DNA from: Octopus bimaculoides
Lineage: Eukaryota
Assembly: GCF_001194135.2 (NCBI RefSeq)
Contig: NC_068983.1
Coordinates: 87,527,450 to 87,591,449 of the forward strand
Reading direction: 5' to 3'
DNA: 64,000 nt
The notes below the pieces were generated by a model, which saw nothing but the letters and a program-made list of their open reading frames with translations, ran no database searches and was not told where the DNA came from. Of the stretch, positions 116 through 46,960 are shown piece by piece. Numbering within the stretch: the first letter of the stretch is position 1; every line of letters starts with the position of its first letter. The position numbers were made by a program, and so were the translations under genes.

Positions 116-775
116 GGCTGGGTTTCAAAAGAAGCACCACCTAAATGGAGAATTGATTCTGTAATAAATTTTCTTTTGTAGATTTGTATCATAATAGGTT
201 TCAAACATATAATTTTGGCAAAAAAATCAAGAATGAAACAACTACATCAAGTTACAAACTCCAAACAGAAATGAAAGGTCTAGAGAAAAAACAAAGAAGG
301 AAACAATGTTTTAAAGAATCTTTCAGATGAATTGTAATCTCAGATATTCTAAAAATAGGNNNNNNNNNNNNNNNNNNNNNNNNNNNNNNNNNNNNNNNNN
401 NNNNNNNNNNNNNNNNNNNNNNNNNNNNNNNNNNNNNNNNNNNNNNNNNNNNNNNNNNNNNNNNNNNNNNNNNNNNNNNNNNNNNNNNNNNNNNNNNNNN
501 NNNNNNNNNNNNNNNNNNNNNNNNNNNNNNNNNNNNNNNNNNNNNNNNNNNNNNNNNNNNNNNNNNNNNNNNNNNNNNNNNNNNNNNNNNNNNNNNNNNN
601 NNNNNNNNNNNNNNNNNNNNNNNNNNNNNNNNNNNNNNNNNNNNNNNNNNNNNNNNNNNGAAATGGATCACATCTTGTGTCTATTAAAACCTAAATTGTT
701 CTCAACATGAAATATAGCAGCATACCAAAAACGTGAGCGGGCAAGACATTTAAAATCACCTAAACAAGCATTATT

Positions 776-840
776 AAACAGGAACTAGTTTCGGATTTAA
801 CAAATTCTTACCATTTGTCTATTTCTCATCAGCCTGATTT
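776..840 (-). ncRNA. Candidate minimal type-I hammerhead ribozyme (Penelope-type, palindromic helix III)
   Basis: Minus strand reads AAAT-CAGG-CTGATGA-[G..stem II..C]-GAAA-CTAGT-T-CCTG-TTT. It has the exact CUGAUGA and GAAA core, CAGG/CCTG helix I, ACTAGT palindromic helix III, and a 13-bp stem II with 10 of 13 positions paired. Confidence 0.6.
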
Positions 841-936
841 GTAATGAGCCGTAATCATCAGAATCGTATACAGAGTTGCCCACCGCCATTGGTGCGCGTG
901 TATATGGTTCTGCTAATTACAGCTTAATGGTAAAAT

Positions 937-981
<45 letters not shown>

Positions 982-983
<2 letters not shown>

Positions 984-1350
984 CCCCCACCACTGCTTGA
1001 CATCCAGTATTGGTGTGTTTATATCCCCATAACTTGGCAATTTGGCAGAAGGGACCGATAGAATAAGTACTAGGCTTAAAAAAAGAAGTCGTGGGGTCAA
1101 TTTGTTCAAATAAAACCCTTCAAGGCAGTGCCCCAGCATGGCCACAGTCAAATGACTGAAATAAGTAAAAGATAAAAAATATATCCATATCTTTATTGGG
1201 GGTCATTGTCTTGAAGATTCTACTCAAAGAAATCAACCCCAGTACTTTTTAAGCCAGGTACTTATTCTGGTGGTCTCTTTTTTGAAGCCGCTAAGTTACA
1301 GGAACAAAAACAAACCAACATAGGTTGACAAGTCGTGGTGTTGGACAAAC
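982..1350. mobile_element. Two octopus-type SINE 3-prime halves in tail-to-tail inverted orientation
   Basis: The plus copy (about 982-1175, ...GATAGAATAAGTACTAGGCTT...CCCCAGCATGGCCACAGTCAAATGACTG) and the minus copy (about 1200-1350, extending to about 1470) are reverse complements of the same repeat, which recurs throughout the window. Confidence 0.7.
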
Positions 1351-2171
1351 ATAAAAACACACATATAGATGATGCGATTCCACACAGTTTCCTTCTGTCA
1401 AATTTACTCACAGAGAATTGATTGGCCCAGGGCTGACATAGAACACTCTTGGCCATGGTGCTGAAACTGTGGCTTCAAAGCAAGCTTCTAAATCACACAC
1501 CTATATATATGTATATATATTACACACCTCTTTTGTCATCAGACCCTACCTGCCATCACTCCCTTCGATATTCTCTCAGCTTCAATCCTCCACTCCAGTC
1601 ATTATTTCTTCTGTAATACTCTTGTTCCCTTCACCTCCTCTAGTTTGTCTGTCATTACCTATTCTTTTCATCTTGGTCACATTGCCTTGAATGAACAATA
1701 TAGAGCAGTGAGGTAGAAGGTAACCTCACTTGCACTGGTGACATGAAAAAATGCACACAGGAAGGAGGAAAGACAAATATATGGTTCAGAGGGCCTTTTA
1801 GTCTTTTAGAAGACATAACAACTTAACTTCTTTTGTACTGGAACCATGGTAAACTGTACTCACTACATTCTGTAAAGCGATTTGTGTTAGGAAGGGCATC
1901 CAACAATACCAAATAAACTAATAATATCCAACAATATCAAATAAACTAATAAGGGAATATGCAAACAAGATGTGGTCTTCCAACCTGTCTAGGTGAAGAG
2001 TGTCTCTGAATATAGATTGCCATGTCCAACTCATTCCAAAATGGAAAGCAGATGTAAAATGATAATGTTATATGACAAATATACATAATATATATATGTT
2101 GCACTAATAAATGACAATGTCATATATATATGTAGAGAGAGAGGGAGTGGGAAGAGGGCATATGTACTGGG

Positions 2172-2287
2172 AAATTAAGATAAACACCAGTATAAATATT
2201 TAGTGCCTTATTGCATTTTGTTAAAGAGATCTCTGTAACAAAATGCAATAAGGAACTAAATATGTATATTGGTGTTTATCTTAATTT
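2172..2287. repeat. Loopless imperfect palindrome (fold-back / MITE-like hairpin)
   Basis: Arms 2172-2229 and 2230-2287 are reverse complements centred on AGAGA|TCTCT with a few mismatches. Degenerate pairing extends to about 2153 and 2304. Confidence 0.85.
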
Positions 2288-3479
2288 TTCACTATATGTG
2301 CTCTATATATAACTAGAAACACTATTAAGTACAGTAGTTGACTAGCCACTAAAGTGAAAGATGACTGGATACGTGTAGCTCTAACTCATACAGTAGTAGT
2401 GTTGTACCCCCTCACACACACACATAATCTGTCCTCTGTCAAAACCCTCACACTCTCACCATGTCCACCTCAGTCCTCATCTCTAATCATCTGTAACACT
2501 ATTTACATGCATTTCCAAACTTACCTATTTACGAACCCTTTCAGTTGCTCTTTCTCTATTCTCTCTCTTACATTCCCTTGTACATTGAGGATATCCCCAG
2601 CTCTCTCTCTTCTCTTTGCAAGTTCCTGTCCCAGTTCCTATGCTTCTATCATACTCTCACATACTGAAGCAGTTATGAAAAGCTATCAAGACCAAACACC
2701 CAGGAAAACTAATGAATGGGGTCTTGTTTCATCAGGACAATGCTCCAGCATGCAAATCCCTAGTTTCAGTGGTTGTTGTGCATGGTTGTGGCTTTAAACT
2801 GGTCGATCACCATCCCTAATCTCCTGATTTATTCCCATCTGACTATATTCACTCAGTTGTAAGTACTTGGTAACCTCAGTGCAATGAAAAGAAAAACACC
2901 CAGTACATACTGCACAGTGGTTGGAGTTAGGAATTGCATCCAGCTGTAGGAACCATGTCAAAGCAGACACTGGAGCTTGGCACAATCCTCTGGCTCATTT
3001 GTTGAAAGCACCTGGCCCATGCCAGTATGGATGATGAATGTTAGATTATGATAATGATGGTGTGTGCATGCTTGCACGTATCCATGCGTGTGTGTTCAGA
3101 AAATGCAAAAATGAAATCTAAATAGTCATTCAATAATGGTTTCATTTTTTGGCACAAGGCCAGCAAGTTTGGCGTAAGTTGATACTTATTTTATTGATCC
3201 TGAAAGAATGAAAGGCAAAGTCAACCATGGAGGGATTTGGACACAAAATATAAAGACAGATGATATTGCCAGGCATGATAACAATTCTGCCAGCTTATGT
3301 TCATTCTCAATCTCTTTTTTTTTTTTTTGAGATTTTAGCATCAACATCAGTTAGTAGTAAGACTAATTATGCTGTTATATGCAGAATTATTTCATGTTTT
3401 GCAGTATTACTATTATATATATGTTGGTAACAGTTAGTTACAACTAATATTATTGGTTATAATTAATGCTTTTAATTAC

Positions 3480-3644
3480 CTTGGGAACTGGTATTGGTCT
3501 CACTGGAGGCTTGGGTGTATTAGGTAGACTGATGCTCCATTTGTTGTATGGATCCCCTTCATAAGTACACTGTATGTTTAAAATTGTTGAACAAATTTCT
3601 TTCTCAGTTAAATTACTTTTAGAAAGCACATAGAGGGTTTCAGG
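3480..3644 (-). CDS. SMPD1: Acid sphingomyelinase-like (SMPD1-like) second coding exon: end of saposin-B domain and proline-rich linker
   Basis: Bounded by TTTTCAG| acceptor and AAG|GTAATT donor; 165 nt, phase 0-0, in frame with the previous exon. Translates as PETLYVLSKSNLTEKEICSTILNIQCTYEGDPYNKWSISLPNTPKPPVRPIPVPK. It supplies saposin Cys 5 and 6 and the W-x-I-S-L-P-x-x-P-K-P-P linker typical of acid sphingomyelinases. It is not in the ORF track. Confidence 0.9.
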
Positions 3645-3742: not shown

Positions 3743-4939
3743 CAAGGGGTGGTTGAAAAGTTCATAGACTTACCAAGATACCCTCATGAAATGTGACCAA
3801 ATAAAGTCTATTTTTCAACATAGCCTCTCTCCCCACTGTAGTCTACATACTTCTTCCATCGGTGTTGCAGCACTTGGATCCCATTGGTGAAGCTTTTATC
3901 ATGTTGGTCAAAAAATTCATGAACAGCAAATATGACATCATTATCACTGTGATACTGGTTCCCAGCCAAGCGCTTTTTCATGTTAGGGAACAGGTGATAG
4001 TCAGATGGGGCAAAATCAGGAGCAGAAGGAGGGTGATCAATTAGTTCAAAGCCACACTCATGCACAGCAGCCATTGAAACCAGGGACTTACATGCTGGAG
4101 CATTGTCCTGATGAAACAAGACCCCTTTCATTAGTTTTCCTCAGCATTTCATTTTGATAGCCTTTTGTAACTGCCTCAGTAAGTTGGCATAGTACTCTCC
4201 ACTGATGTGTGGTCCTTTTGAAGAAAGTCAATAAGCATAGTGCCTTTTGCATCCCAAAAAACTGAGGCCATCACTTTCCCTGCAGATGAAATGACCTTGG
4301 CCTTCTTTGGAGTAGGTTGGCGGGGGTGTTTCCACTGCATTGATTGTCTCTTTGTTTTTGGTTCAAAGTGATGTACCTAACACTCATCCTGGTTTAGGAA
4401 ACATTCAAGAAAACATTCAAGAAAACCATGTCAGATCTGATCAACTTGGTGTGCTTTTGATCAGGTGTCAAATGTGACACCCACCAAACGGAAACATTTG
4501 TCATGCCAAGTTCATTGTGCATAATATTCTCAACTCTCTCATGGGATATGCTAATAGCATAGGCGGCAGGATGTCCAGACCCTGGGTCAGCTTCAACACT
4601 CCCCCTTCCCCTCTTAAATTCAGATGTTAACTTTTGCATTGTTGATAAAGCTGGCATGTCATCCCCAATTGTAGTGAACATGTCAGCATGAATGCCCTTA
4701 GGGGCTAAACCCTCTTTCTGCAGGTACTTGATAGCACCTCAATGCCAAATTTTGTCCATTTTCAAAAGAAGTTGCTACTAGTTACTTTTGAAGTTTTCTT
4801 TGAACAGCCAGATGTCATTTTACTTAGAAAGAAACAATGCAGTTATTAATAAGAACAGGTAAAATTACTGCATGCAAGATTTCACACCTCTAGCATCAAT
4901 CATTCATAGTCAGCCCATGAACTTTTCAGCCCACCCTCG
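3743..4939 (-). mobile_element. Defective mariner (DD34D) transposon
   Basis: About 28-bp TIRs (TA|CAAGGGGTGGTTGAAAAGTTCATAGACT and AGCCCATGAACTTTTCAGCCCACCCTCG|TA) with TA TSD. Broken transposase shows FHQDNAP, HPPSAPDFAPSDYHLFP and RWKKYVD motifs. Confidence 0.9.
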
Positions 4940-5243: not shown

Positions 5244-5513
5244 TTGGAATTCTTTGACAACATCAGCACATACTTTACGACTTTCAATGTAGAAATGTAT
5301 ACAAGCTTCTTTGATGATTTCACCAATGAGTGAACTTTGGGGATTACTCTTCAATATCTTTCGGAAAAATACAATTGCTGATTCACAAGCAAGGCATTTC
5401 AGAGAAAGTTTCAAGGAACGCTTTTCTACTTGATGGTGAAGTGGAGAAGTTGTAACAAAAGCCACCCAAGACACAAGCAAAACAGCTGGTATAACATAAT
5501 AGAGTTTCATCAT
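5244..5513 (-). CDS. SMPD1: Acid sphingomyelinase-like (SMPD1-like) first coding exon: signal peptide, KR site, N-terminal part of saposin-B domain
   Basis: Translates as MMKLYYVIPAVLLVSWVAFVTTSPLHHQVEKRSLKLSLKCLACESAIVFFRKILKSNPQSSLIGEIIKEACIHFYIESRKVCADVVKEFQ (90 aa). It has a hydrophobic signal peptide and CxxC...C...C saposin spacing. It ends at a phase-0 CAA|GTAAGT donor (5238-5243). A polypyrimidine tract plus CAG acceptor (5524-5526) lies 10 nt upstream of the ATG. Confidence 0.88.
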
Positions 5514-6664
5514 TGATAAATTTCTGGAATAGAAAAAGAAAAAGGGAAAATTTATATCATAAAACAAAAGTAAACTATGAACTATTAAAGAATAAAAAAA
5601 TCCTCTTTCATTAGTTACTTATTTCAGTCTTTGGACTATGGCCAAACTGGGGCACTACCATGAAGTATGTAGTCAAACAAATTGACCTCAGTACTTTATG
5701 GGGATGTAAACAAACAACACAAACAGATGCACATGCACACACATAAATAGACTTCTTTCAGTTTCTGTTTACCATGTAACATATTTTTAAGCCTGATACT
5801 TATTCTATTGGTATTTTCTCTTGCTGAATTGCTAAGTTACAGGGACATAAAACAAACTAACACTGGTTGTCAAGTAGTGATGTGGGGACAAACACACACA
5901 CACACATGATGGGCTTCTTTCAGTTTCTGTCTACCAAATCCACTCATAAGGTTTTGGTTGACCTGAGGCTATAGTAAAAGACATTAGCTCAAGGTGCCAT
6001 GCAATGGGACTGAACCCAGAACCATGTGGTTGGGAAGTAAACTTCTTACCACACAGCCATGCCTATACCTATACATCAAGATAAAAATTAATTCTGTAAA
6101 TTTCAGAATTAGGAATCTGACAAAACAATGAAATGATTGAAGCTTATATCTAACCTAATCATTGTTATTGTTTTTATTTGTGTTGTCAGAGAGTTCTCAT
6201 TTAATGAGCATTGTATTAAAAAATGTGCAAGTTCCACTTGCATTCTATTCATGATTAGCAGTTAACCATTGTTATGTACAATGATCCTTTAACTTGGCAA
6301 TTGTCCACGAGACTTGTAAATAAAGGCAGAGAAGTCTGCAAACCACTACCACATGGTTTTTGACAAAAACAGAACTAAAGATTATAGATATTATAACAGT
6401 TAATGATCCTTGTGGCCAAAACCACAACAACCACAACAACCACAACATATCATGACTGAACTTTGTCACCAATTGTTATAGTCTCTATCAAACCACTGGA
6501 AATGTTAGAGAAAGAGAACTAGATAACCCATTTATTAACAATTTCACATTAGCTTTCCAGTGTTAGTTGTAGCTGACTGGGTTTGCAAAATATCAGAGTA
6601 AATATTCAATAATGGAATTATTTCCTTAAATACCAACCAACCAGCCAACCAACCAAAATTGGAA

Positions 6665-11220: not shown

Positions 11221-12617
11221 CTGCATGCATCCCACATTATTAAGCAAATCAACCTTCTCTCAATAAATAAATATATATTCGTTCAAAACCAGTTGTTTTC
11301 CCACTGTCTGTTGGCAACTTTTATCTGCGCACATTCTGTTAAAATAAATTGGATCTGCACAGATGAAAACAAACAGCAGCCATTGTTGTGTAGCAGCAAC
11401 ATTTCTGCTGTCCCAAATTATTAAGCAGGTGCCCAATTTAAGTCTCATTATGGGTCAGAAACGTGATCTTACCTCAAATGAGAAGTCTACCATAGTGTCA
11501 GAGTTTGGAAAAGGAAAAACAACCATGGAAATATCAAAAATACTGGGAAGAGATCACTGAATAGTGAAGAAATTTGTGCAGTCTCCTATTTCTCTTTGGT
11601 CAAGGGCAGATAAGGGTAAGTCAAGGATTGTTTCGAATCATACTTTGTCACGTGTGAAAAGGGAAGTTGTGCGGAATCCATGTCTGACAAGTAGAGAAGT
11701 CTTCAAATAGAAGACGTATGGAAAATTACCAGGCGTCACCTCTTGAAGCAGGTAGCCAGGAATGTTAAACCTGTTACAAGGTCCCCTCTGAAAGTTGTTC
11801 ATAAGCAGAAGAGACTGAAATGGGCAGAAGAATATATTAAGATAGATTTTTCAACAGTTCTGTTCATTGACGAATGCTATGCTACCCTTGATGGACCAGG
11901 TGGCTGGAGTAAATGTTGGGTACCGATCAGCATGAACCATCCTCATCGTTTGAAATGCCAACAGAGGGGAGGTGGGGTCATGTTATCGGCTGGCATCATT
12001 GGTAGTATGATCGTCAGGCCATGGGAAGTCCCAGGTGCCATTAAGATGACATCGAAAACATATGTTACCTTCTTAAAGGACAATTTCCAACTGTGGTTCA
12101 AAAAGTAAAAACTTTCATTCAAGAGAAAACTGGTCTTCATGCAAGATAAAGCCCCACCTCATGCAGCGAAGAATTCTAAGGAGTGCCTGCAGCAAATAGG
12201 CTTCTCTTGCAGGTTGATTGACAGAGTGGCTACCTTGTTCCCCAGACTTAAACCTGATCGAGAACATGTGGAATATCCTAAAGAGGCGCATTTACCAAGA
12301 TGGACAGCAGTTTTCAAGTAAAGTTGTCCTCGGAGATGCTGCTCAAAGCATGACACAAGAGGATATCATCACCTTGACAAATTCAATGAATCAGCACTTA
12401 AGAAAGGTTGTTGCATGTGGAGGATCATACATCAAACATTAGGAGCTGTATGACATCATAATCCCATGATTATTTTCATTTGAACATATTATTATGTTTA
12501 CCATTAAGTCCTTTATGAATAATTTTGTTTGTTAAACCATCATTGTTGAATTAAATAAATGTTTGCTTTGACTTGATCATCATTTTTATTATACTTGCCT
12601 AATAGTTCATGACAGTG
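11221..12617 (+). mobile_element. Defective Tc1-like (DD34E) transposon
   Basis: Transposase from ATG 11449 (MGQKRDLTSNEK...GRDH), with VLFIDEC, QDKAPPH and WLPCSPDLNLIENMW motifs, stops and frameshifts. Degenerate TIR-like ends ATTATTAAGCAA and TTGCCTAATAGTTCATGACAGTG; boundaries approximate. Confidence 0.88.
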
Positions 12618-14341: not shown

Positions 14342-14373
<32 letters not shown>

Positions 14374-14656
14374 AGGTGTGCGTTTGTGTGTGTATCTTTG
14401 TGTTTGTCCCCCCATCACCACTTGTCAACCCGTGTTGGTGTGTTTACATCCCCATGACCTAGCAGTTCGGCAAAGAGAACAATACAATAAGTACTAGGCT
14501 TAAAACAATCAGTCCTGAGATCAATCTGTTCAATCAAAACTCTTCAAGGTGGTGCTTCAGCATTGCCACAGTCAACTGACTGAAACAAATAAAAGAAAAA
14601 GAATAAAAGAATAAATATATTGATGAAAGAGCTATCCATTGTTATTATCATCACAT

Positions 14657-14873
14657 AAAGGCGACAGGCTGGCAGAACTGTTATCACACTGAACAAAATG
14701 CTTCATGACATTTTGTTTGTCTTTACATTCTGAGTTCAAATTCCACCGAGGTCAACTTTGCCTTTCATCCTTTCGGGGTGGATAAATTAAAGTATCAGCT
14801 GAATACTGGGGTTGATATAATCAGCTTACTCCTCCCCTTAAACTGCTGGCCCTGTGCCAAAATTTGAAACCAA
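14657..14873 (+). mobile_element. tRNA-derived octopus SINE with 15-bp TSD
   Basis: Head GGCGACAGGCTGGCAGAA..GAGTTCAAATTCC..GAGGTCAACTTTGCCTTTCATCC. TTATTATCATCACAT is duplicated at 14642-14656 and 14874-14888. Confidence 0.8.
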
Positions 14874-16791: not shown

Positions 16792-17883
16792 ACAGGATGA
16801 GTAAAACGTAAGCAACATTTTGTAACGCCTTCTTTTGCAGGAAACTATCAAGGTACTTGAAAAAGTGGTAGTCGGTAGGAGAAAGGTCTGGGGAATAAGC
16901 TAGGTAGGGAAGAACTCCGTTGGCGAGTTCCCTCAACTTCTGGAGCATCATTAGTGAAACATATGGTTGAGCATTGTCATGGAGAATGACTGGCCTTCTT
17001 CTGTTGACCAGGTGGAAAAGTAGCAGTTTTTTTAATCATTTTGGCAATTTCATGGCAATATGTTTCTGCAGTAATGGTTTTTCCAGGTTTTAAGAAGTTA
17101 TAGTGGATGAGTGCAGCAGTACACCACCAAACAGTCACCATAACCTTCTTTTTGAAGAGCTCGGGTTTAGAGAAGGTTTTTGGTGCTTCACTTTGGTCCA
17201 ACCACTGCAAAGAACATTTTTTATTATAGCACAGAATCCACTTTCCATTGCAAGTTACAATATGGTCGAGAAATGGATCGGTCTGGTTACGGAGAAGAAG
17301 TGACGAGCAAATTTCATATCTGTGCATTCCCTGATTTTCATTCAAATCATGTGGTACCCATTTGTCAAGCTTTTTTGATTTTCCGATCACATGCAAATGG
17401 TTGCAGGCAGTCTTTTGGCTAACGTGAAATTCTTTTGCCAGTTCTCAAGTGGTTGTACATGGATCTTTCTCAATGACAGTCTCTAATTGATTGTCATTGA
17501 TGACAAAAGGGCGTCCACTATGCTCATGATCTTCAAGGCTCAGGTCTCCACTGTGAAATCATTTAAACCATTTTTGAACTGACCACTCACTGTCATTTCC
17601 TCACCAAACGTTTCATTGATATCATGAGCAGTTTCAGCTGTTTTATGTCCTTTTTCAAGTTGAAGCAAAATTGCTTAAATATTGCACTTTGGCAGTTCCA
17701 TTCCAGATGATTGCAACAATAGTGAAAAGAATAACAATGTTAATTTATTGGTGCATTTGGGCAAGTCTATGTCTGTATTATCAGACAATTTCAAAAAAAT
17801 GTTTAAAAAATTTCAAAACTCTACAAAAATCCAGTACAAATTCTTCATGGTTCAAAACGTTGTTTACTTTCTACTTAACCTGA
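16792..17883 (-). mobile_element. Defective mariner transposon nested in the 5-prime UTR of the outer mariner
   Basis: Degenerate TIRs TA|ACAGGATGAGTAAAACGTAAGCAACATTTTG and CAAAACGTTGTTTACTTTCTACTTAACCTGA|TA with TA TSD. Transposase motifs KWVPHDL and YLAYSPDLSPTDYHFF. Confidence 0.85.
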
Positions 17884-18170: not shown

Positions 18171-18404
18171 GCGGCGAGCTGGCAGAAACGTTAGCACTCC
18201 GGACGAAATACTTAATGGTATTTTGTCTGCCGTTACGTTCTGAGTTCAAATTCTGCCGAGGTCGACTTTGCCTTTCATCCTTTCAGGGTCAATAAAATTA
18301 AGGACCAGTTACGCACTGGGGTCAATGTAATCGACTTAATCCCTTTGTCTGTCCTTGTTTGTCCCCTCTATGTTTAGCCCCTTGTGGGCAATAAAGAAAT
18401 AAGA
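18171..18404 (+). mobile_element. tRNA-derived octopus SINE inserted in the outer mariner ORF
   Basis: 16-bp TSD AACTACAGCCTAGAAG at 18155-18170 and 18405-18420, a GGCGGCGAGCTGGCAGAAACGTTAGC head and an A-rich tail. Confidence 0.9.
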
Positions 18405-26947: not shown

Positions 26948-27358
26948 CACAAACATACTCTTTTACTCTTTTACTTGTTTCAGTCATTTGACTGCGGCCA
27001 TGCTGGAGCACCACCTTTAGTCAAGCAAATCGACCCCAGGACTTATTCTTTGGATGCCTAGTACTTATTCTATCGGTCTCTTTTACCGAACTGCTAAGTT
27101 ATGGGGACGTAAACACACCAGCATCGGTTGTCAAGCGATGTTGGGGGGACAAACACAGACACACACACATATAAATATATATACATATATATACGACGGG
27201 CTTCTTTCAGTTTCCGTCTACCAAATCCACTCACAAGGCTTTGGTTGGCCCGAGGCTAATAGTAGAAGATACTTGCCCAAGGTGCCACGCAGTGGGACTG
27301 AACCCGGAACCATGTGGTTGGTAAGCAAGCTACTTCCCACACAGCCACTCCTACGCCT
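26948..27358 (-). mobile_element. Full-length composite octopus SINE (GGCGTAGGAGTGGCTGTGTGG family)
   Basis: The minus strand reads the tRNA-like head GGCGTAGGAGTGGCTGTGTGG..GGTTCCGGGTTCAGTCCC, a central GGCACCTTGGGCAAGT domain, a (TA)n spacer and a 3-prime half ending in CAGTCAAATGACTGAAACAAG. Other copies lie at about 7195-7500, 14140-14600, 27473-27810, 34975-35240, 54220-54366 and 61860-61960. Confidence 0.85.
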
Positions 27359-28169
27359 ACACAAATACATTTTTATATATATTCTGTGGTGCAGTGGTTA
27401 TCACATCTACTTAACACTACATAAGAGAAGGTTATGAGTTTGAAACTTGCTGGAACCCAAAGTTATCTTTAGATGTAGGCATAGCTGTGTGGTAAGAAGC
27501 TTGCTTCCCAACCACATGATTCTGGATTCAGTCCCACTGCATGGCACCTTGGGCAAAAAGTCTTCTACTATAGCCTAAGGCTGACCAAAGCCTGTTGTAT
27601 ATATGTGTGTATTTGTAGCCCACCACTGCTTTACATCTGGTGTTGTTGGTGTGTTTACATCCCCATAACTTAGTGGTTCAGTAGAAGACACCAACAGAAT
27701 AAGTACCAAGCTTAACAAAAAATAAGTACTTGGGTTGATTCATTTGACTAAAAGTTCTTTAAGGCAGTGCCCCAGCATGACCACAGTCTAATGACGGAAA
27801 CAAGGAAAAGATAAAAGATACACACACACACACACGCAGTCAGCTACTTTCAGTTTCCACCTACCAATTCTAGTCACAGGACTTTGGTCAGATGGGCTAT
27901 AGCAGAAGACCCTTGCACACAGAGCCATGCTATGGGACTGAACCTGAAACCATATGATTATATACAAGCATATAAAAATACCATATAGCATAAATTCTTG
28001 ATTTCCTATTTATATTATCTCTACCTTTATAGGTTGTGTCATAATTACTAAATGGCAATTGAGACCAACTCCAAAAAGTTCAGTTGACCTGATGGCTATC
28101 TCCAACCAGGAACTACACAACTAGACAAGAGAGATATGAAAGGTCGCGTTGCCTTTATCGTCCAACCAG

Positions 28170-34941: not shown

Positions 34942-35574
34942 TATATTTATGTATATGAATATATATATATAGTAGTGGCTGTGTGGTAAGTAGCTTCCTT
35001 ACCAACCACATGGTTCCTGGTTCAGTCCCATTGTGTGACACTTTGGGCAAGTGTCTTCTACTATAGCCTCGGGCCGGCCAAAGCATTGTGAGTGGATTTG
35101 GTAGACAGAAGCTGAAAGAAGACCGTCGTATATATGTATATGTGTTTGTCCTCCCAACATCGCTTGACAACCGATGCTGGTGTGTTTACATTCCTGTAAC
35201 CTAGTGGTTCAGCAAAAGAGGCAGATAGAATAAGTACTAGGCTTACAAAGCAAATTAATGTTAAAACAAGGTACAAGATATTTTGTTTAGAAATAATGAT
35301 AATAATATACATGCTTACAAGGAGAAGGTCGGATATATTTAATTAAAGTTACTAATGGTACAAACACAATTAATGTAGCATTACTGGGAAGGATTTACTT
35401 AACCAACTATAGAAGGAGAAAATAAAGGACAAGTGGCGATGGAGGCAGAAATAGATATTATTTAAGATAATATTAAAAGATATTATTCAGAGGACATTTG
35501 GTAAAAAAAAAAAAAAAAAAAANNNNNNNNNNAAAAATAATACCTAAAAACTTAAACTAGTAAGAAGGATGGAA

Positions 35575-35994
35575 TTAATGATAATATATGAAGGTATGAC
35601 TCTGCCAGTGCTTACATCGATACGCTCTCTGTGTTATCTGGTTTACTAGATGATTCTTGGAGAACAAAATATGGAAAAGCTCCAAGTTACAAAGAGGACA
35701 AAAATCCTTACCTTTGTCGTAGGGAACTGAGGTAGCCAGTATAGACCATTCCAAAGTGAATTGCTTATTGCAATCTTTCAGTTCCCAAATAAATTTACTT
35801 AGGCCAGTGCTGTTAGCTTTATTCCTATCCCTAAATGAAAAATAATGGTCCGATATTCTCTTGGAGACCTGCGTCGATGAGATACCTACGTAAAATGAGG
35901 CATCTGTGTAAGACATTACCTTACATTGATAAACCACATTCTTGGTCTTGGCATTCACACTTAAAAACTTAATTCTATTAGGATTTGATTCCAA
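35575..35994 (-). mobile_element. Penelope-like element C-terminal GIY-YIG endonuclease (uninterrupted 139-codon frame, 5-prime truncated)
   Basis: Peptide NVVYQCKV..FYVGISST..KRISDH..SF..NST.LSKFIWELK..WSIL..CPLCNLE..RCKH shows the PLE GIY-YIG and CCHH-type motif pattern. Confidence 0.85.
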
Positions 35995-36008
35995 GATGCG
36001 AGAATGTA

Positions 36009-36440
36009 CTAGCTGAGATACCCGGCGTTGCTCAGGAGTGAAATGGCATATTTGTTTATTCTTACCTTTTACTTGTTTAAAATATTTGACTGTGGCGTTA
36101 ATGGAAAATTGCTTTTAGTTGAACGAATTGACCCCCAAGTAGTCATTCTTTCGGCCTGTTTTGTGAACGGAGTAATTTATGGGGACATAAACATACCTAC
36201 ATCAGTTGGCAAGCAATATATATATATATATATATATATTAATACACACACATATATGTATATGAATATAAATACATGATTGTACATGAAGTTTGGTAAA
36301 AGAAGGTGATCAGTATTTTTGGTCTAAAACACTACATGGACCATAAGTAAGGCATTTGTAAAATTTGAATGAAATTAGTTGTGTAGTTCTCAAGTTTTAG
36401 GGATTCGCACAGACAGACACACAGACACACATTGTCTAGA
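36009..36440 (-). mobile_element. Non-autonomous Helitron-like element (3-prime end clear, 5-prime end uncertain)
   Basis: The minus-strand terminus is CCTGAGCAACGCCGGGTATCTCAG-CTAG|T. There is an (ACAG)n tract near 36410 and a SINE fragment inside. Confidence 0.6.
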
Positions 36441-39970: not shown

Positions 39971-42571
39971 TGTGTGTGTGTGTTTGTGTGTGTGAAGGCA
40001 TATATATACATATATATGTGTGTTTGGCTTAGTGGTTCAAGCATTCGGCTCAGGATTGTAAGGTCATGAGTTCAATTCTTGGCAATACATTGTGTCCTTG
40101 AGCAAGACACTTTATTTCACGCTGATCCAGTACACTCAGCTAGCAAAAATGAGTAGTACCTGTATTTCAAAGGGCCGGCCATGTCACACTTTGTGTCACG
40201 CTGAATCTCCCTGAGAACTACATTAAGAGTACATGTGTCTGTGCAGTGCTCAGCAACGCCCTTTAATTTCACAAGCATGCTGTTCCCTTGANNNNNNNNN
40301 NNNNNNNNNNNNNNNNNNNNNNNNNNNNNNNNNNNNNNNNNNNNNNNNNNNNNNNNNNNNNNNNNNNNNNNNNNNNNNNNNNNNNNNNNNNGAGAGAGAG
40401 AGAGAGAGAGATAGATAGATAGATAGATAGTCGTTTAAGAATCTGTAAGTCAATAAATAGGTAATCATATATTTGTCAATAGAATGTTTAAACCAAATAC
40501 AGTATTCCAGATTTACAATACTGTATACTTGATATATATATATATATATATATATTCTGCATGTGAATGTGTATACCCACACGTGCATGTTGGGAGGCAT
40601 ACATATAAGTAGTCATCGTACTCTTACATTAGAAGTGTTTAGAATCTAACTTTTGTCGTATCATGCATTATCCAGACCAAGGAAGCCCTTATCTAAAGGT
40701 TTCTTATAGTCAGCATACACAACTTTACACTGTACAATGCGACGTTATGCACTATTTCATTTTACTGTAGCTCCTGCAAGATTGTTGGTTATGAAAAGCA
40801 TGTCTCCAAACTTTTTTATGTAATATAATATAAACACCTCCATAGAAAATAAAATAAAATATCTGTGTTTACACACACACATACATGCTTACATAATACA
40901 AATACTTATATGCACTCGTATCTATTTATCTACATATATAATTGTGAGTTGTATATTATTTTTTCATAGGTAAGGGTGATGTTGTGAATCCAAAATCTCT
41001 GTATATTACAATTCTAACTCATTACATTTCCAACACAGGTGTGTATCGAGTACTTCGAATTTCTGTTCACGATAATTCCATAAATACAAACAAATACTCA
41101 ATCATAGCCGTATGGGTATGTGCAAACATGGATTTTTATGAAAGTGTTCTTTCTGAAAAACCAAAGGAAAGCTGAACGAAAACGAAAAGGAAAACTACAT
41201 GGAGAAAGAAATGAAAACAATAACAAAAATCTGACTCACCATGCGTCTGAAAACGTTCGTTGTAAATCGGTTTCGTAAATACAGTTGACTGATTCTATTT
41301 AGACTTGTTCAACACTGCAGTAGTAGTACTTCTCATGTCATTTACTGGAGACCAAATAAACAATGAGAAATGGTAGAGTGCGAAGGCGGAGATATTCCAG
41401 CACTACTAAACGTTGTCATTTAACAGAAGACGTAGGTAGAGTCACCGGCTGATGTGATCAGAGAGAAAAAGGAAAAGATAAATTTATCAACAGTGGTGTG
41501 ATGGTAGTGAAAAGGGTTGTAGTGGAAGTTTGTAGTCGTAGTAGTGTTAGCGGCTGATAAACACTATTTGTCTGAGATTAATATCAATAGCGAAGCTGAC
41601 TGAATGCGCTGGAGATGCTTCTCGTAAGCAGCAGTCAACGGTGAACATTAACTACCCTAGTCTTGTTTATTATCAATATAGACATGACGTATATCTTAAA
41701 CATCGCAATATTTCTTTTCTCTTCTGTATACGCAGTATTAACTGGTAAATAAACTCGTTTTGTTTCTCTGCTCACCATCTCGAGACAATTATGTCAGGGA
41801 CAGATTTTAAGAACCCGCTCCACCAGCTTCTTATCATTTCCGTTAATTACATGCTGATATGAAGGGTTTCTTCATGAGGAATGAATGTAGAATTACAAAC
41901 AAAGAAACCATAATTAAAAGAAGAGCGAGTACAGGTTCTCAGGGAGTAAGACGATTTTGGAAATCCGGTTTCGACGAAAATCAAAGCTTGACAGAAGGCT
42001 TGTCAACTTTATTCCTTCCTGGTTTTTATTTTCAGTTTACCCACAATAACAGTATCACCGGCAAACGTCTTTGACGAACGCAGTAAGGGAGAAACACCAT
42101 GACTGTGGTTCTTAATGTTTTTTCACGGGAGATCAAATAAAAACTTATTGGCAATAAACATATTTAATGCAATTTTTAAAGGTGAATCTTCAAAACTAAA
42201 TCTTTTATCGTTTATTTCTTTACCTATGGGGCACCATCTTGAAGGATTTAATCAAACAAACCACCACAGTAATTATTATTTTAAAGTCTGGTACTTGTTC
42301 TATCAGTCTTTTTTTGCTTAGCTGTTAATAAGTCAAGGTGACGTAAACAAACCAGCACCGGTTGTCAAACAGTGGTAAGACACACACACACACAGGCACG
42401 CGCGCGCGGCAGGCTTCTTTCAGTTTCCGTAATCCAGGTCTACTCACAAAGGTTTAGTCGGCCCGGGGCTATAGTAGAAGACTATTTTTATAAACTTTGC
42501 TAAAATTCCTCATACACACATACATACATACACACACATACATACACACACATATACATACATACATACAT

Positions 42572-46434: not shown

Positions 46435-46960
46435 CTACAGGCGTATGCTCAGGGCAAGCCCCTTCACTCGCACCATTCTCACCACTTTCATCCACCTTTC
46501 AGCAAACTGGCTAGAAGACAACACTTTCTTCTGTACCCTTATTTTCGTTTTCAAGTGGAACTTATAGAAGTTCATCAGGGATTGGCTAAAGAGAAAAGTG
46601 TTTGTCTTCAGCCCCTTCAATCTCGTCCACCATACAACTTCTTTCGCCATAGCCACCAGGAATATAATCACAGCTCTTCCTTCCCGGTTAGAGAAAGGCG
46701 GTGGGGCGATCTTCACAATGAATTTAGTTGACAGCCGGATCCGTCCTACACGTGACAGCAAGTGTTCGACATAAATCCACAGGTCAGCAATACTCGGGCA
46801 CTGGACGAGTGCATGCAGGACCGTCTCGTCGTCCTGCTCATATCTCGGACATGCTCGGCTGACGGCACTTTCGTGCTTGTAAAGCTTATCTCGAACAGAC
46901 AAAGCTCCTCGGTAGAGTGCCAGGCCAGAGACTTTTGGAAATTATCCATCGGTCCCGGGC
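46435..46960 (-). mobile_element. L1/Tx1-clade LINE ORF2 3-prime fragment
   Basis: Peptide CPRYEQDDETVLHALVQCPSIADLWIYVE is the degenerate zinc-binding motif of L1-clade ORF2, followed by EVVWWTRLKGLK. Confidence 0.75.

What the first reader, a model, noticed from the sequence alone, without database searches (positions are those of the whole stretch)
776..840. Hammerhead ribozyme motif on the sense strand of a sphingomyelinase intron
Seen: the minus strand has the complete hammerhead core (CUGAUGA at 832-826, GAAA at 792-789). Helix I is CAGG/CCUG, extendable by AAA/UUU. Helix II has 7 contiguous distal pairs but a mismatched base, and helix III is the loopless palindrome ACUAGU followed by U, giving a GUU cleavage site between 783 and 782. 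Established: Penelope-like elements and retrozymes carry minimal type-I hammerheads with palindromic helix III that cleave as dimers. Inference: this motif lies downstream of exon 3480-3644 on the transcribed strand, so it could cut the SMPD1-like pre-mRNA. Weak helix II pairing and GUU suggest slow or decayed activity.
Basis: partly seen in the sequence, partly recalled or inferred. Interest (0 to 1): 0.72.

Follow-up and report, generated by a model that had tools for sequence, protein, structure and literature searches.

The report
Lone hammerhead-like motif, probably chance
A 65-base stretch inside an intron of an acid-sphingomyelinase-like gene spells the hammerhead ribozyme consensus, but it is not predicted to fold as one, has no partner copy or transposon context, and is most likely a chance match or at best a dead relic.

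Summary
The gene context is also right. The motif lies on the sense strand, 2.6 kb into the intron after exon 3644-3480 of an acid-sphingomyelinase-like gene (PDB 5fi9, E=2.4e-12).

Support stops there.
- **Rfam:** no hammerhead model matches, even on 86 nt at E<=10.
- **Helix II:** next to the core it is one isolated G-C pair, then three mismatches in the next five positions.
- **Helix III:** it is a loopless palindrome, so it needs a second copy. None exists in the 64 kb.
- **Fold in context:** the hammerhead fold lies 5-9 kcal/mol above the minimum, helix I has probability <=0.003, and the core pairs with upstream CUCAUUA.
- **Transposon context:** no Penelope-like coding remnant lies in 661-3479, and 661-942 is not repeated in the window.

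Chance gives 0.01 such consensus matches per window. That falls to about 1e-5 to 1e-4 if every favourable feature is counted, or roughly one to ten per genome of a few Gb. The pattern is therefore borderline, not decisive.

My estimates: chance about 0.6, inactive retroelement relic about 0.27, active ribozyme about 0.03. Only the source genome and a cleavage assay can settle it.

The parts
776..840 (-).
   Evidence: Read directly. It is the only hit of my descriptor in the window.
833..836 (-). Helix I 5' strand, CAGG. AAA 840-838 can add three pairs if U837 bulges.
   Evidence: Pair probability is 0.81-0.90 in a 68-nt construct but at most 0.003 with native flanks.
826..832 (-). Core box CUGAUGA (C3 to A9)
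793..825 (-). Helix II region of 33 nt: G-C, then A.C, A-U, A.A, U-A, A.A, then a 7-bp stem GACAAAU/AUUUGUU with loop GGUAAGA
   Evidence: The contiguous stem from the core is 1 bp. The constrained energy is -0.8 kcal/mol, and P(G10.1-C11.1) is 0.18 in isolation and 0.001 in context.
789..792 (-). Core box GAAA (G12 to A15.1)
784..789 (-). Helix III as the loopless palindrome ACUAGU, which is usable only in a dimer
   Evidence: The self-duplex is -4.8 kcal/mol. The predicted dimer uses the AUCAG/CUGAU palindrome instead.
782..783 (-). Hypothetical cleavage site: U783 (H17), then C782
   Evidence: Follows from the numbering. It has not been tested.
779..782 (-). Helix I 3' strand, CCUG
842..848 (-). 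CUCAUUA, which pairs with UGAUGAG (831-825) and sequesters the core
   Evidence: Pair probability is about 0.6 in the 141-nt context.
855..861 (-). A second CUGAUGA, 23 nt upstream. It does not give a hammerhead reading.
   Evidence: It is rejected once the register is correct.
3480..3644 (-). Exon 2 of the acid-sphingomyelinase-like gene (end of the saposin domain and the Pro-rich linker)
   Evidence: Splice sites read. PDB 5fi9, E=2.4e-12.
5244..5513 (-). Exon 1 coding part (signal peptide and saposin domain)
360..659 (.). Assembly gap of 300 N, starting 116 nt downstream of the motif on the minus strand. It is the only nearby place where a second copy could hide.
943..1100 (+). (TG)n plus the right arm of a repeat present about 8 times in the window. 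This copy lacks the left arm, so 661-942 is flank and not part of the repeat.

Best explanation
The motif is a chance match to the short hammerhead consensus in unique, AT-rich intronic DNA, and it does nothing as a ribozyme. The conserved letters, a 4-bp helix I and a 6-nt palindrome happen to line up. The part that has to stack on the catalytic core, helix II, is not formed. The palindromic helix III has no partner copy. In the nascent transcript the core is predicted to pair with neighbouring sequence instead. The intron is then simply spliced out.
For: 1) No hammerhead family of Rfam 15 matches: not on the whole window at gathering score, not on 340 nt at E<=10, and not on 86 nt at E<=10, where hits as weak as 4.5 bits are listed. 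2) The contiguous helix II stem from the core is 1 bp, which is typical of random descriptor hits. The published minimal hammerheads have 6-8 bp there (PMC4209133). 3) The 71-nt RNA folds at -7.2 kcal/mol with z=+0.55 against shuffles, and that fold pairs core CUG with UAG. With native flanks the hammerhead fold is 5.0 kcal/mol (141 nt) or 8.9 kcal/mol (231 nt) above the minimum. Helix I has P<=0.003, and UGAUGAG pairs with upstream CUCAUUA at P about 0.6 in the 141-nt context. 4) There is no second copy, tandem array or other copy of 661-942 in the window. The predicted dimer does not use helix III. 5) No Pfam domain appears in six frames of 661-3479, and no reverse transcriptase or GIY-YIG domain appears in the ten longer reading frames tested. 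6) The chance rate of the consensus is 0.013 per window, or 0.0095 with decoy cores on the real sequence. That is about 150-200 per Gb.
Against: The match is better than a typical chance hit. Only 8.8e-4 random hits per window have a palindrome of 4 nt or more. Only 1.5-2.6% of random hits fold into the hammerhead shape as cheaply in isolation. An ungapped 10-of-13 pairing of the spacer ends occurs in 0.8-1.7% of Markov spacers and 2.5-3.8% of real 33-mers. The conserved G10.1-C11.1 identity has a chance of 1.5%. Multiplying these gives roughly 1e-5 to 1e-4 per window, or about one to ten per genome of a few Gb, and less if G10.1-C11.1 is also counted. These extra features were chosen after seeing the sequence. 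Real minimal hammerheads can number thousands per invertebrate genome, so the prior for a genuine relic is not small. The stretch 773-916 is also mildly CpG-rich (93rd percentile).
Confidence: 0.6

Rival explanations
1. It is an inactive relic or atypical variant of a hammerhead from a retroelement (the 3' or pLTR end of a truncated Penelope-like element, or a non-LTR retrozyme monomer) that landed in the intron in sense orientation. The core survived, but helix II and the partner copy did not.
For: The core is complete, G10.1-C11.1 is present, helix I is short at 4 bp, and helix III is A-U around a palindromic CUAG. These are features listed for Penelope-like-element and amphibian hammerheads (PMC4209133; PMC7229834). 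Most such motifs occur as single copies from truncated elements. The pattern is rarer than a typical chance hit. The motif sits next to an assembly gap and near a microsatellite, both of which are common around these elements (PMC8557442). There is mild CpG enrichment at 773-916.
Against: The 7-bp stem is separated from the core by 6 nt on each side. No simple decay of a 6-8-bp helix II adjacent to the core produces that arrangement, so a family with a 13-position helix II would be needed, and none of the papers read here describes one. Three mismatches fell in helix II while all 25 or so other constrained bases stayed intact. No reverse transcriptase or GIY-YIG remnant was found in 661-3479, and there is no other copy in 64 kb. 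The microsatellite belongs to the neighbouring repeat. In cephalopods, if that is the host, the Naiad elements are old remnants without canonical hammerheads.
Confidence: 0.27
2. It is an active self-cleaving hammerhead that cuts the sphingomyelinase pre-mRNA between 783 and 782. It would act as a dimer with a copy hidden in the 360-659 gap or with another nascent transcript, and so lower or regulate expression.
For: All core positions and the NUH rule are satisfied on the sense strand. Dimer-dependent hammerheads with this helix III architecture do cleave. Conserved intronic hammerheads exist in amniotes (PMC6155905).
Against: Everything listed for the best explanation applies. In addition, even bona fide minimal hammerheads cleave poorly in vitro and mostly at non-physiological Mg2+. 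The hexamer duplex is only -4.8 kcal/mol. The DNA left of the gap (1-359) shares nothing with 661-942. Retrozymes are depleted from introns in vertebrates, which suggests selection against genic insertion (bioRxiv 10.64898/2026.07.22.740005). From the classical literature (my recollection, not checked here), GUU is one of the slower triplets.
Confidence: 0.03
3. The UGAUGA and CUGA boxes belong to an intronic box C/D small nucleolar RNA.
For: There is a weak match of 845-827 to an archaeal C/D model (sR7, 11.9 bits against a gathering score of 37). Two UGAUGA boxes lie at 860-855 and 831-826.
Against: The box C to CUGA distance is only 23 nt. No CUGA follows the second box within 150 nt. There is no terminal stem, and no snoRNA family reaches threshold.
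Confidence: 0.01

Closest known systems
Minimal hammerheads of Penelope-like elements (Cervera and de la Pena 2014, PMC4209133)
   Same: Type I layout, an exact CUGAUGA...GAAA core, G10.1-C11.1, a short helix I of 4-5 bp, a palindromic helix III that works only in a dimer, and frequent occurrence as single dispersed copies.
   Different: In those elements helix II is 6-8 contiguous pairs directly on the core, usually with one bulged base after A9. They lie in the flanking repeats of elements that encode a reverse transcriptase and a GIY-YIG nuclease. They form families with covariation. Here helix II next to the core is a single pair, the spacer is 33 nt, and neither an element nor a family is seen.
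Type I hammerheads of amphibian satellite 2 and metazoan non-LTR retrozymes (PMC7229834)
   Same: Helix III is a single A-U pair around a palindromic tetraloop. Activity is poor as a monomer and efficient as a dimer. The context is AT-rich.
   Different: Those sit in tandem repeats of 150-450 bp and have a canonical 4-bp helix II and loop 1 to loop 2 tertiary contacts. Here there is no tandem repeat, no loop 1 and no Rfam Hammerhead_1 match.
Conserved intronic hammerheads of amniotes (HH9 in RECK, HH10 in CTCL; PMC6155905)
   Different: Those are canonical, fast, monomeric type I ribozymes that are conserved across species and modelled in Rfam (RF02275 and RF02277, as I recall the accessions). 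The present motif matches neither model, and its conservation cannot be tested here.
'HHR_core' matches in Naiad Penelope-like elements (Craig et al. 2021, PMC8557442)
   Same: The catalytic boxes are present, but the stems do not fit any hammerhead descriptor. Cephalopods carry old Naiad remnants.
   Different: Those cores are annotated inside recognisable Naiad elements, with spacers of 7-17 nt (35-50 nt in the 'half-core' cases), and their function is unknown. No Naiad sequence was recognised here.

Membership tests
Hammerhead ribozyme (any type) | Conserved core: C3 U4 G5 A6 N7 G8 A9, G12 A13 A14, A15.1-U16.1, and H17 not G | tested here: met
   CUGAUGA 832-826, GAAA 792-789, U784 and U783.
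Hammerhead ribozyme (any type) | Helix I pairs the sequence 5' of C3 with the sequence 3' of H17 | tested here: met
   CAGG/CCUG gives 4 Watson-Crick pairs, plus 3 A-U pairs after a bulge. It is stable only without native flanks.
Hammerhead ribozyme (any type) | Helix II is a contiguous stem stacked on the core, starting at G10.1-C11.1 | tested here: not met
   One G-C pair is followed by A.C, A-U, A.A, U-A and A.A. The stem from the core is 1 bp, and the constrained energy is -0.8 kcal/mol. P(G10.1-C11.1) is 0.18 in isolation and 0.001 in context.
Hammerhead ribozyme (any type) | Helix III is a hairpin, or a palindrome completed by a second copy | tested here: inconclusive
   The palindrome ACUAGU is present. 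No partner copy exists in 64 kb. The 300-N gap 116 nt away cannot be read.
Hammerhead ribozyme (any type) | Score at or above the gathering threshold of an Rfam hammerhead model | tested here: not met
   No hammerhead hit at gathering score or at E<=10 on 340 nt or 86 nt. Caveat: I could not verify that these models detect the minimal variants.
Hammerhead ribozyme (any type) | Site-specific self-cleavage leaving 2',3'-cyclic phosphate and 5'-OH ends | not testable with these tools
   This needs an in vitro transcription assay or end-mapping.
Penelope-like-element minimal hammerhead | Located in the flanking repeat of an element encoding a reverse transcriptase and a GIY-YIG nuclease, or a truncated remnant of one | tested here: not met
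   No Pfam domain in six frames of 661-3479, and none of these domains in the ten longer reading frames tested. A short non-coding 3' fragment cannot be excluded.
Penelope-like-element minimal hammerhead | Helix II of 6-8 bp, usually with one unpaired base between A9 and 10.1 | tested here: not met
   The 7-bp stem lies 6 nt from the core on each side. The feature is taken from PMC4209133.
Penelope-like-element minimal hammerhead | Member of a genome-wide consensus family with covariation. Orphan descriptor hits were discarded by the authors. | not testable with these tools
   The source genome is not available. There is no other copy in the window, and a metagenome pattern scan found 0 matches.
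Metazoan non-LTR retrozyme | Tandem repeats of 150-450 bp, each carrying a type I hammerhead with loop 1 to loop 2 contacts | tested here: not met
   No tandem or direct repeat covers 661-942. The sequence left of the gap is unrelated. There is no loop 1.

The most novel reading that the evidence does not exclude
A solitary, sense-strand minimal hammerhead variant with a long, internally mismatched helix II sits in intron 2 of an invertebrate (octopus-like) acid sphingomyelinase gene. It cleaves the pre-mRNA as a dimer, either with a copy hidden in the adjacent assembly gap or between nascent transcripts. That would make it an intronic hammerhead outside amniotes with a helix II design not described so far.
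Probability: 0.03. Interest if true: 0.6.

Novelty: not a real feature. Interest (0 to 1): 0.17.

Why it matters
A working hammerhead on the sense strand of an intron would cut a lysosomal-enzyme pre-mRNA. It would also extend domesticated intronic ribozymes beyond amniotes. The data instead show how easily the 11-letter hammerhead core, with a 4-bp helix and a short palindrome, arises in AT-rich DNA: about once per 5-7 Mb of sequence (0.0095-0.013 per 64-kb window). Core letters alone are therefore not evidence. A stem stacked on the core, a partner copy, family covariation and a fold that survives native flanks are the checks that count.

Tried and rejected
- **Rfam searches:** gathering score on the window, then E<=10 on 340 nt and 86 nt. 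No hammerhead was found.
- **Second hammerhead reading:** a reading from the upstream CUGAUGA at 861-855 first appeared because of an off-by-one in my script. It vanished with the correct register.
- **Other hammerheads as an in-window control:** I searched for canonical or minimal forms, including the U3-A8 core variant. None was found. Only a weak CUGAAGA chance hit at 59371(-) turned up.
- **Relatives of the host gene:** the large protein database gave no hit for the 145-aa N-terminus, so no orthologous introns could be fetched.
- **Metagenome pattern scan:** the motif with a variable spacer gave 0 matches.
- **Supplementary sequence files:** neither of the two Penelope-like-element papers has files held as text, so no covariance model of minimal hammerheads could be built.
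- **Insertion into a microsatellite:** rejected. The (TG)n is internal to a repeat of two roughly 160-nt arms, and the copy at 943-1100 merely lacks one arm.
- **Box C/D snoRNA reading:** rejected on geometry.
- **GIY-YIG-like reading frame at 35578-36114(-):** this would have shown a Penelope-like element in the window, but Pfam gives no such domain.

Full report
**What is there.** The minus strand from 840 to 776 reads AAAU-CAGG-CUGAUGA-GAAAUAGACAAAUGGUAAGAAUUUGUUAAAUCC-GAAA-CUAG-U-U, then the proposed cut and CCUG-UUU.
- CUGAUGA lies at 832-826 and GAAA at 792-789.
- Helix I is CAGG 836-833 with CCUG 782-779.
- The palindrome ACUAGU lies at 789-784, and U783 is H17.

Helix II is described too kindly. 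Seven distal pairs exist (GACAAAU/AUUUGUU). The six positions next to the core read G-C, A.C, A-U, A.A, U-A, A.A. Only one isolated pair therefore touches the core.

**Gene context.** The minus strand carries two exons.
- Exon 1 coding sequence lies at 5513-5244, and exon 2 at 3644-3480, with AG and GT splice sites.
- The 145 residues they encode match the saposin domain and proline-rich linker of acid sphingomyelinase (mouse 5fi9 E=2.4e-12, human 5i81 E=3.8e-10).
- Pfam and the large protein database gave nothing for this short N-terminus.

The rest of the gene should therefore lie beyond position 1. The motif sits about 2.6 kb into intron 2 on the sense strand.

**Surroundings.** The stretch 661-942 has no other copy in the window and no tandem or direct repeat.
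- A 300-N assembly gap at 360-659 starts 116 nt downstream of the motif. The sequence left of that gap is unrelated to 661-942.
- Upstream on the minus strand lies (TG)n at 943-983 and one arm of a repeat present about eight times in the window. In the other copies the microsatellite is flanked by two arms of about 160 nt. This copy lacks one arm, so 661-942 is ordinary flank.
- No Pfam domain appears in six frames of 661-3479.
- The ten longer reading frames tested yield only mariner, Tc1-like and LINE fragments. No Penelope-like reverse transcriptase or GIY-YIG nuclease appears.

**Is it a hammerhead by existing models?** No. Rfam 15 gives no hammerhead hit at gathering score on the window, none at E<=10 on 340 nt, and none at E<=10 on 86 nt, where matches as weak as 4.5 bits are listed. 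One caveat applies. I could not run a positive control to show that these models detect the minimal variants of Penelope-like elements.

**Does it fold as one?** No.
- The 71-nt RNA folds at -7.2 kcal/mol, no better than shuffles (z=+0.55). That fold pairs core C3-U4-G5 with UAG of helix III.
- In isolation helix I and the distal stem form, but G10.1-C11.1 has a probability of only 0.18.
- With native flanks the hammerhead fold lies 5.0 kcal/mol (141 nt) or 8.9 kcal/mol (231 nt) above the minimum, and helix I drops to P<=0.003.
- In the 141-nt context UGAUGAG (831-825) pairs with upstream CUCAUUA (848-842) at P about 0.6.
- Helix III has no loop, so it can form only between two copies. The hexamer duplex is worth -4.8 kcal/mol, and the predicted homodimer uses the AUCAG/CUGAU palindrome instead.

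**Is it more than chance?** I defined a descriptor: helix I of at least 4 bp with G-U allowed, CUGAUGA, 8-40 nt, GAAA, a palindrome of 0, 2, 4 or 6 nt, then U and H. It finds only this site in the window. Its chance rate and the rarity of the extra features are as follows.

| Measure | Value |
|---|---|
| Descriptor hits per window, first-order Markov sequence (24,000 windows) | 0.013 |
| Same, palindrome of 4 nt or more | 8.8e-4 |
| Hits per descriptor, 2,519 permuted-core decoys on the real window | 0.0095 |
| Random hits with spacer energy as good as the candidate | 10-25% |
| Ungapped 10-of-13 pairing score, Markov spacers | 0.8-1.7% |
| Same score, real 33-mers of this window | 2.5-3.8% |
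| G10.1 and C11.1 identity | 1.5% |
| Random hits reaching the hammerhead shape as cheaply in isolation | 1.5-2.6% |

On the stem-from-the-core measure, the candidate's 1 bp is typical of random hits.

Depending on which features are counted, the expectation runs from about 200 per Gb down to well under 1 per Gb. The favourable features were picked after seeing the sequence, and the one that matters for catalysis is not met. My reading is that this is about as good as the best few chance matches in a genome of a few Gb. That makes it unusual for one window but not decisive.

**Comparison with known systems.** The architecture resembles two known groups.
- Minimal hammerheads of Penelope-like elements share the short helix I, the G10.1-C11.1 pair and the palindromic helix III, and often occur as single copies from truncated elements (PMC4209133).
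- Amphibian and retrozyme hammerheads have a helix III that is one pair around a palindromic tetraloop (PMC7229834).

It differs where those families are defined: 6-8 contiguous helix II pairs on the core, a host element or tandem array, and a family with covariation. The authors themselves discarded descriptor hits that fell in no family.

A decayed copy is hard to derive. The 7-bp stem is offset from the core by 6 nt on both sides. All three mismatches would also have hit helix II while some 25 other constrained bases stayed intact.

Three further points argue against function. Sense-strand retrozymes are depleted from introns in vertebrates (bioRxiv 10.64898/2026.07.22.740005). Genuine minimal hammerheads cleave poorly even as dimers. 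Naiad elements of cephalopods are old remnants without canonical hammerheads, some carrying only the core boxes (PMC8557442).

**Verdict.**

| Reading | Probability |
|---|---|
| Chance consensus match without function | about 0.6 |
| Inactive relic or atypical variant from a hammerhead-bearing retroelement | about 0.27 |
| Active ribozyme cutting the pre-mRNA | about 0.03 |
| Box C/D snoRNA | about 0.01 |

The remainder is unassigned. The source genome was not available. Copy number, family covariation and conservation in orthologous introns, which are the tests that would decide between the first two readings, therefore remain to be done, as does the cleavage assay.

Noticed in passing
window 943-1100, 1246-1363, 5784-5906, 14365-14524, 27032-27193, 27596-27735, 35135-35249, 42279-42394: A dispersed repeat made of two arms of about 160 nt around an internal (TG)n microsatellite, with about 8 copies at 70-90% identity. 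The consensus right arm contains TTTACATCCCCATAACTTAGCAGTTCGGCAAAAGAGACCGATAGAATAAGTACTAGGCTT. From memory this resembles a common octopus repeat, so the host may be a cephalopod. That was not tested.
   Followed up: partly
window 3145-3294(-), 14709-14864(+), 18216-18374(+): Three copies of another short repeat whose translation reads ...(A)EVDFAFHPFGVDK.... From memory it looks like a tRNA-derived SINE seen in octopus genomes. ARAGORN finds no tRNA in the window.
   Followed up: no
window 2155-2304: An inverted repeat with no spacer: two 75-nt arms, 87% complementary, in the same intron as the motif. It could be a foldback or MITE-like element, or an assembly artefact.
   Followed up: no
window 35578-36114(-): A 179-aa open frame next to two assembly gaps. 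By eye its middle (VVYQCKV...FYVGISS...RISDH...) and its CPLC tail resemble a GIY-YIG nuclease with a zinc motif. Pfam gives no GIY-YIG hit, only two weak zinc-ribbon matches.
   Followed up: partly
window 16980-17444(-), 3811-4140(-), about 2700-2900(+), 11695-12439(+): Mariner-type transposase fragments (Pfam Transposase_1 E=3e-23 at 16980-17444; the other two by eye, one in intron 1 and one in intron 2 of the sphingomyelinase-like gene) and a Tc1-like fragment with a weak Tc3 HTH match.
   Followed up: partly
window 56769-58044(+), 46438-46941(-): LINE remnants. There is a weak endonuclease match (Exo_endo_phos E=0.003) followed by further open frames, and a zf-RVT match (E=3.9e-6) on the other strand.
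   Followed up: partly
window 360-659 and 12 further N runs up to 58297: Thirteen assembly gaps of 10-671 N, denser in the second half of the window. GC is 36% and CpG is strongly depleted (P(G|C)=0.086). Together these point to a short-read draft assembly of a repeat-rich animal genome.
   Followed up: no
window 773-916: The only patch in the first 12 kb with 6 or more CpG per 125 nt (93rd percentile of the window). It overlaps the motif and the sequence upstream of it. This may hint at younger, transposon-derived DNA, but it is not significant on its own.
   Followed up: partly
window about 59300-59371(-): A weak hammerhead-like descriptor hit with core CUGAAGA, 3-bp helices I and II and a 4-bp helix III stem closing a 64-nt segment. 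I take it as an example of a chance hit under relaxed rules.
   Followed up: yes
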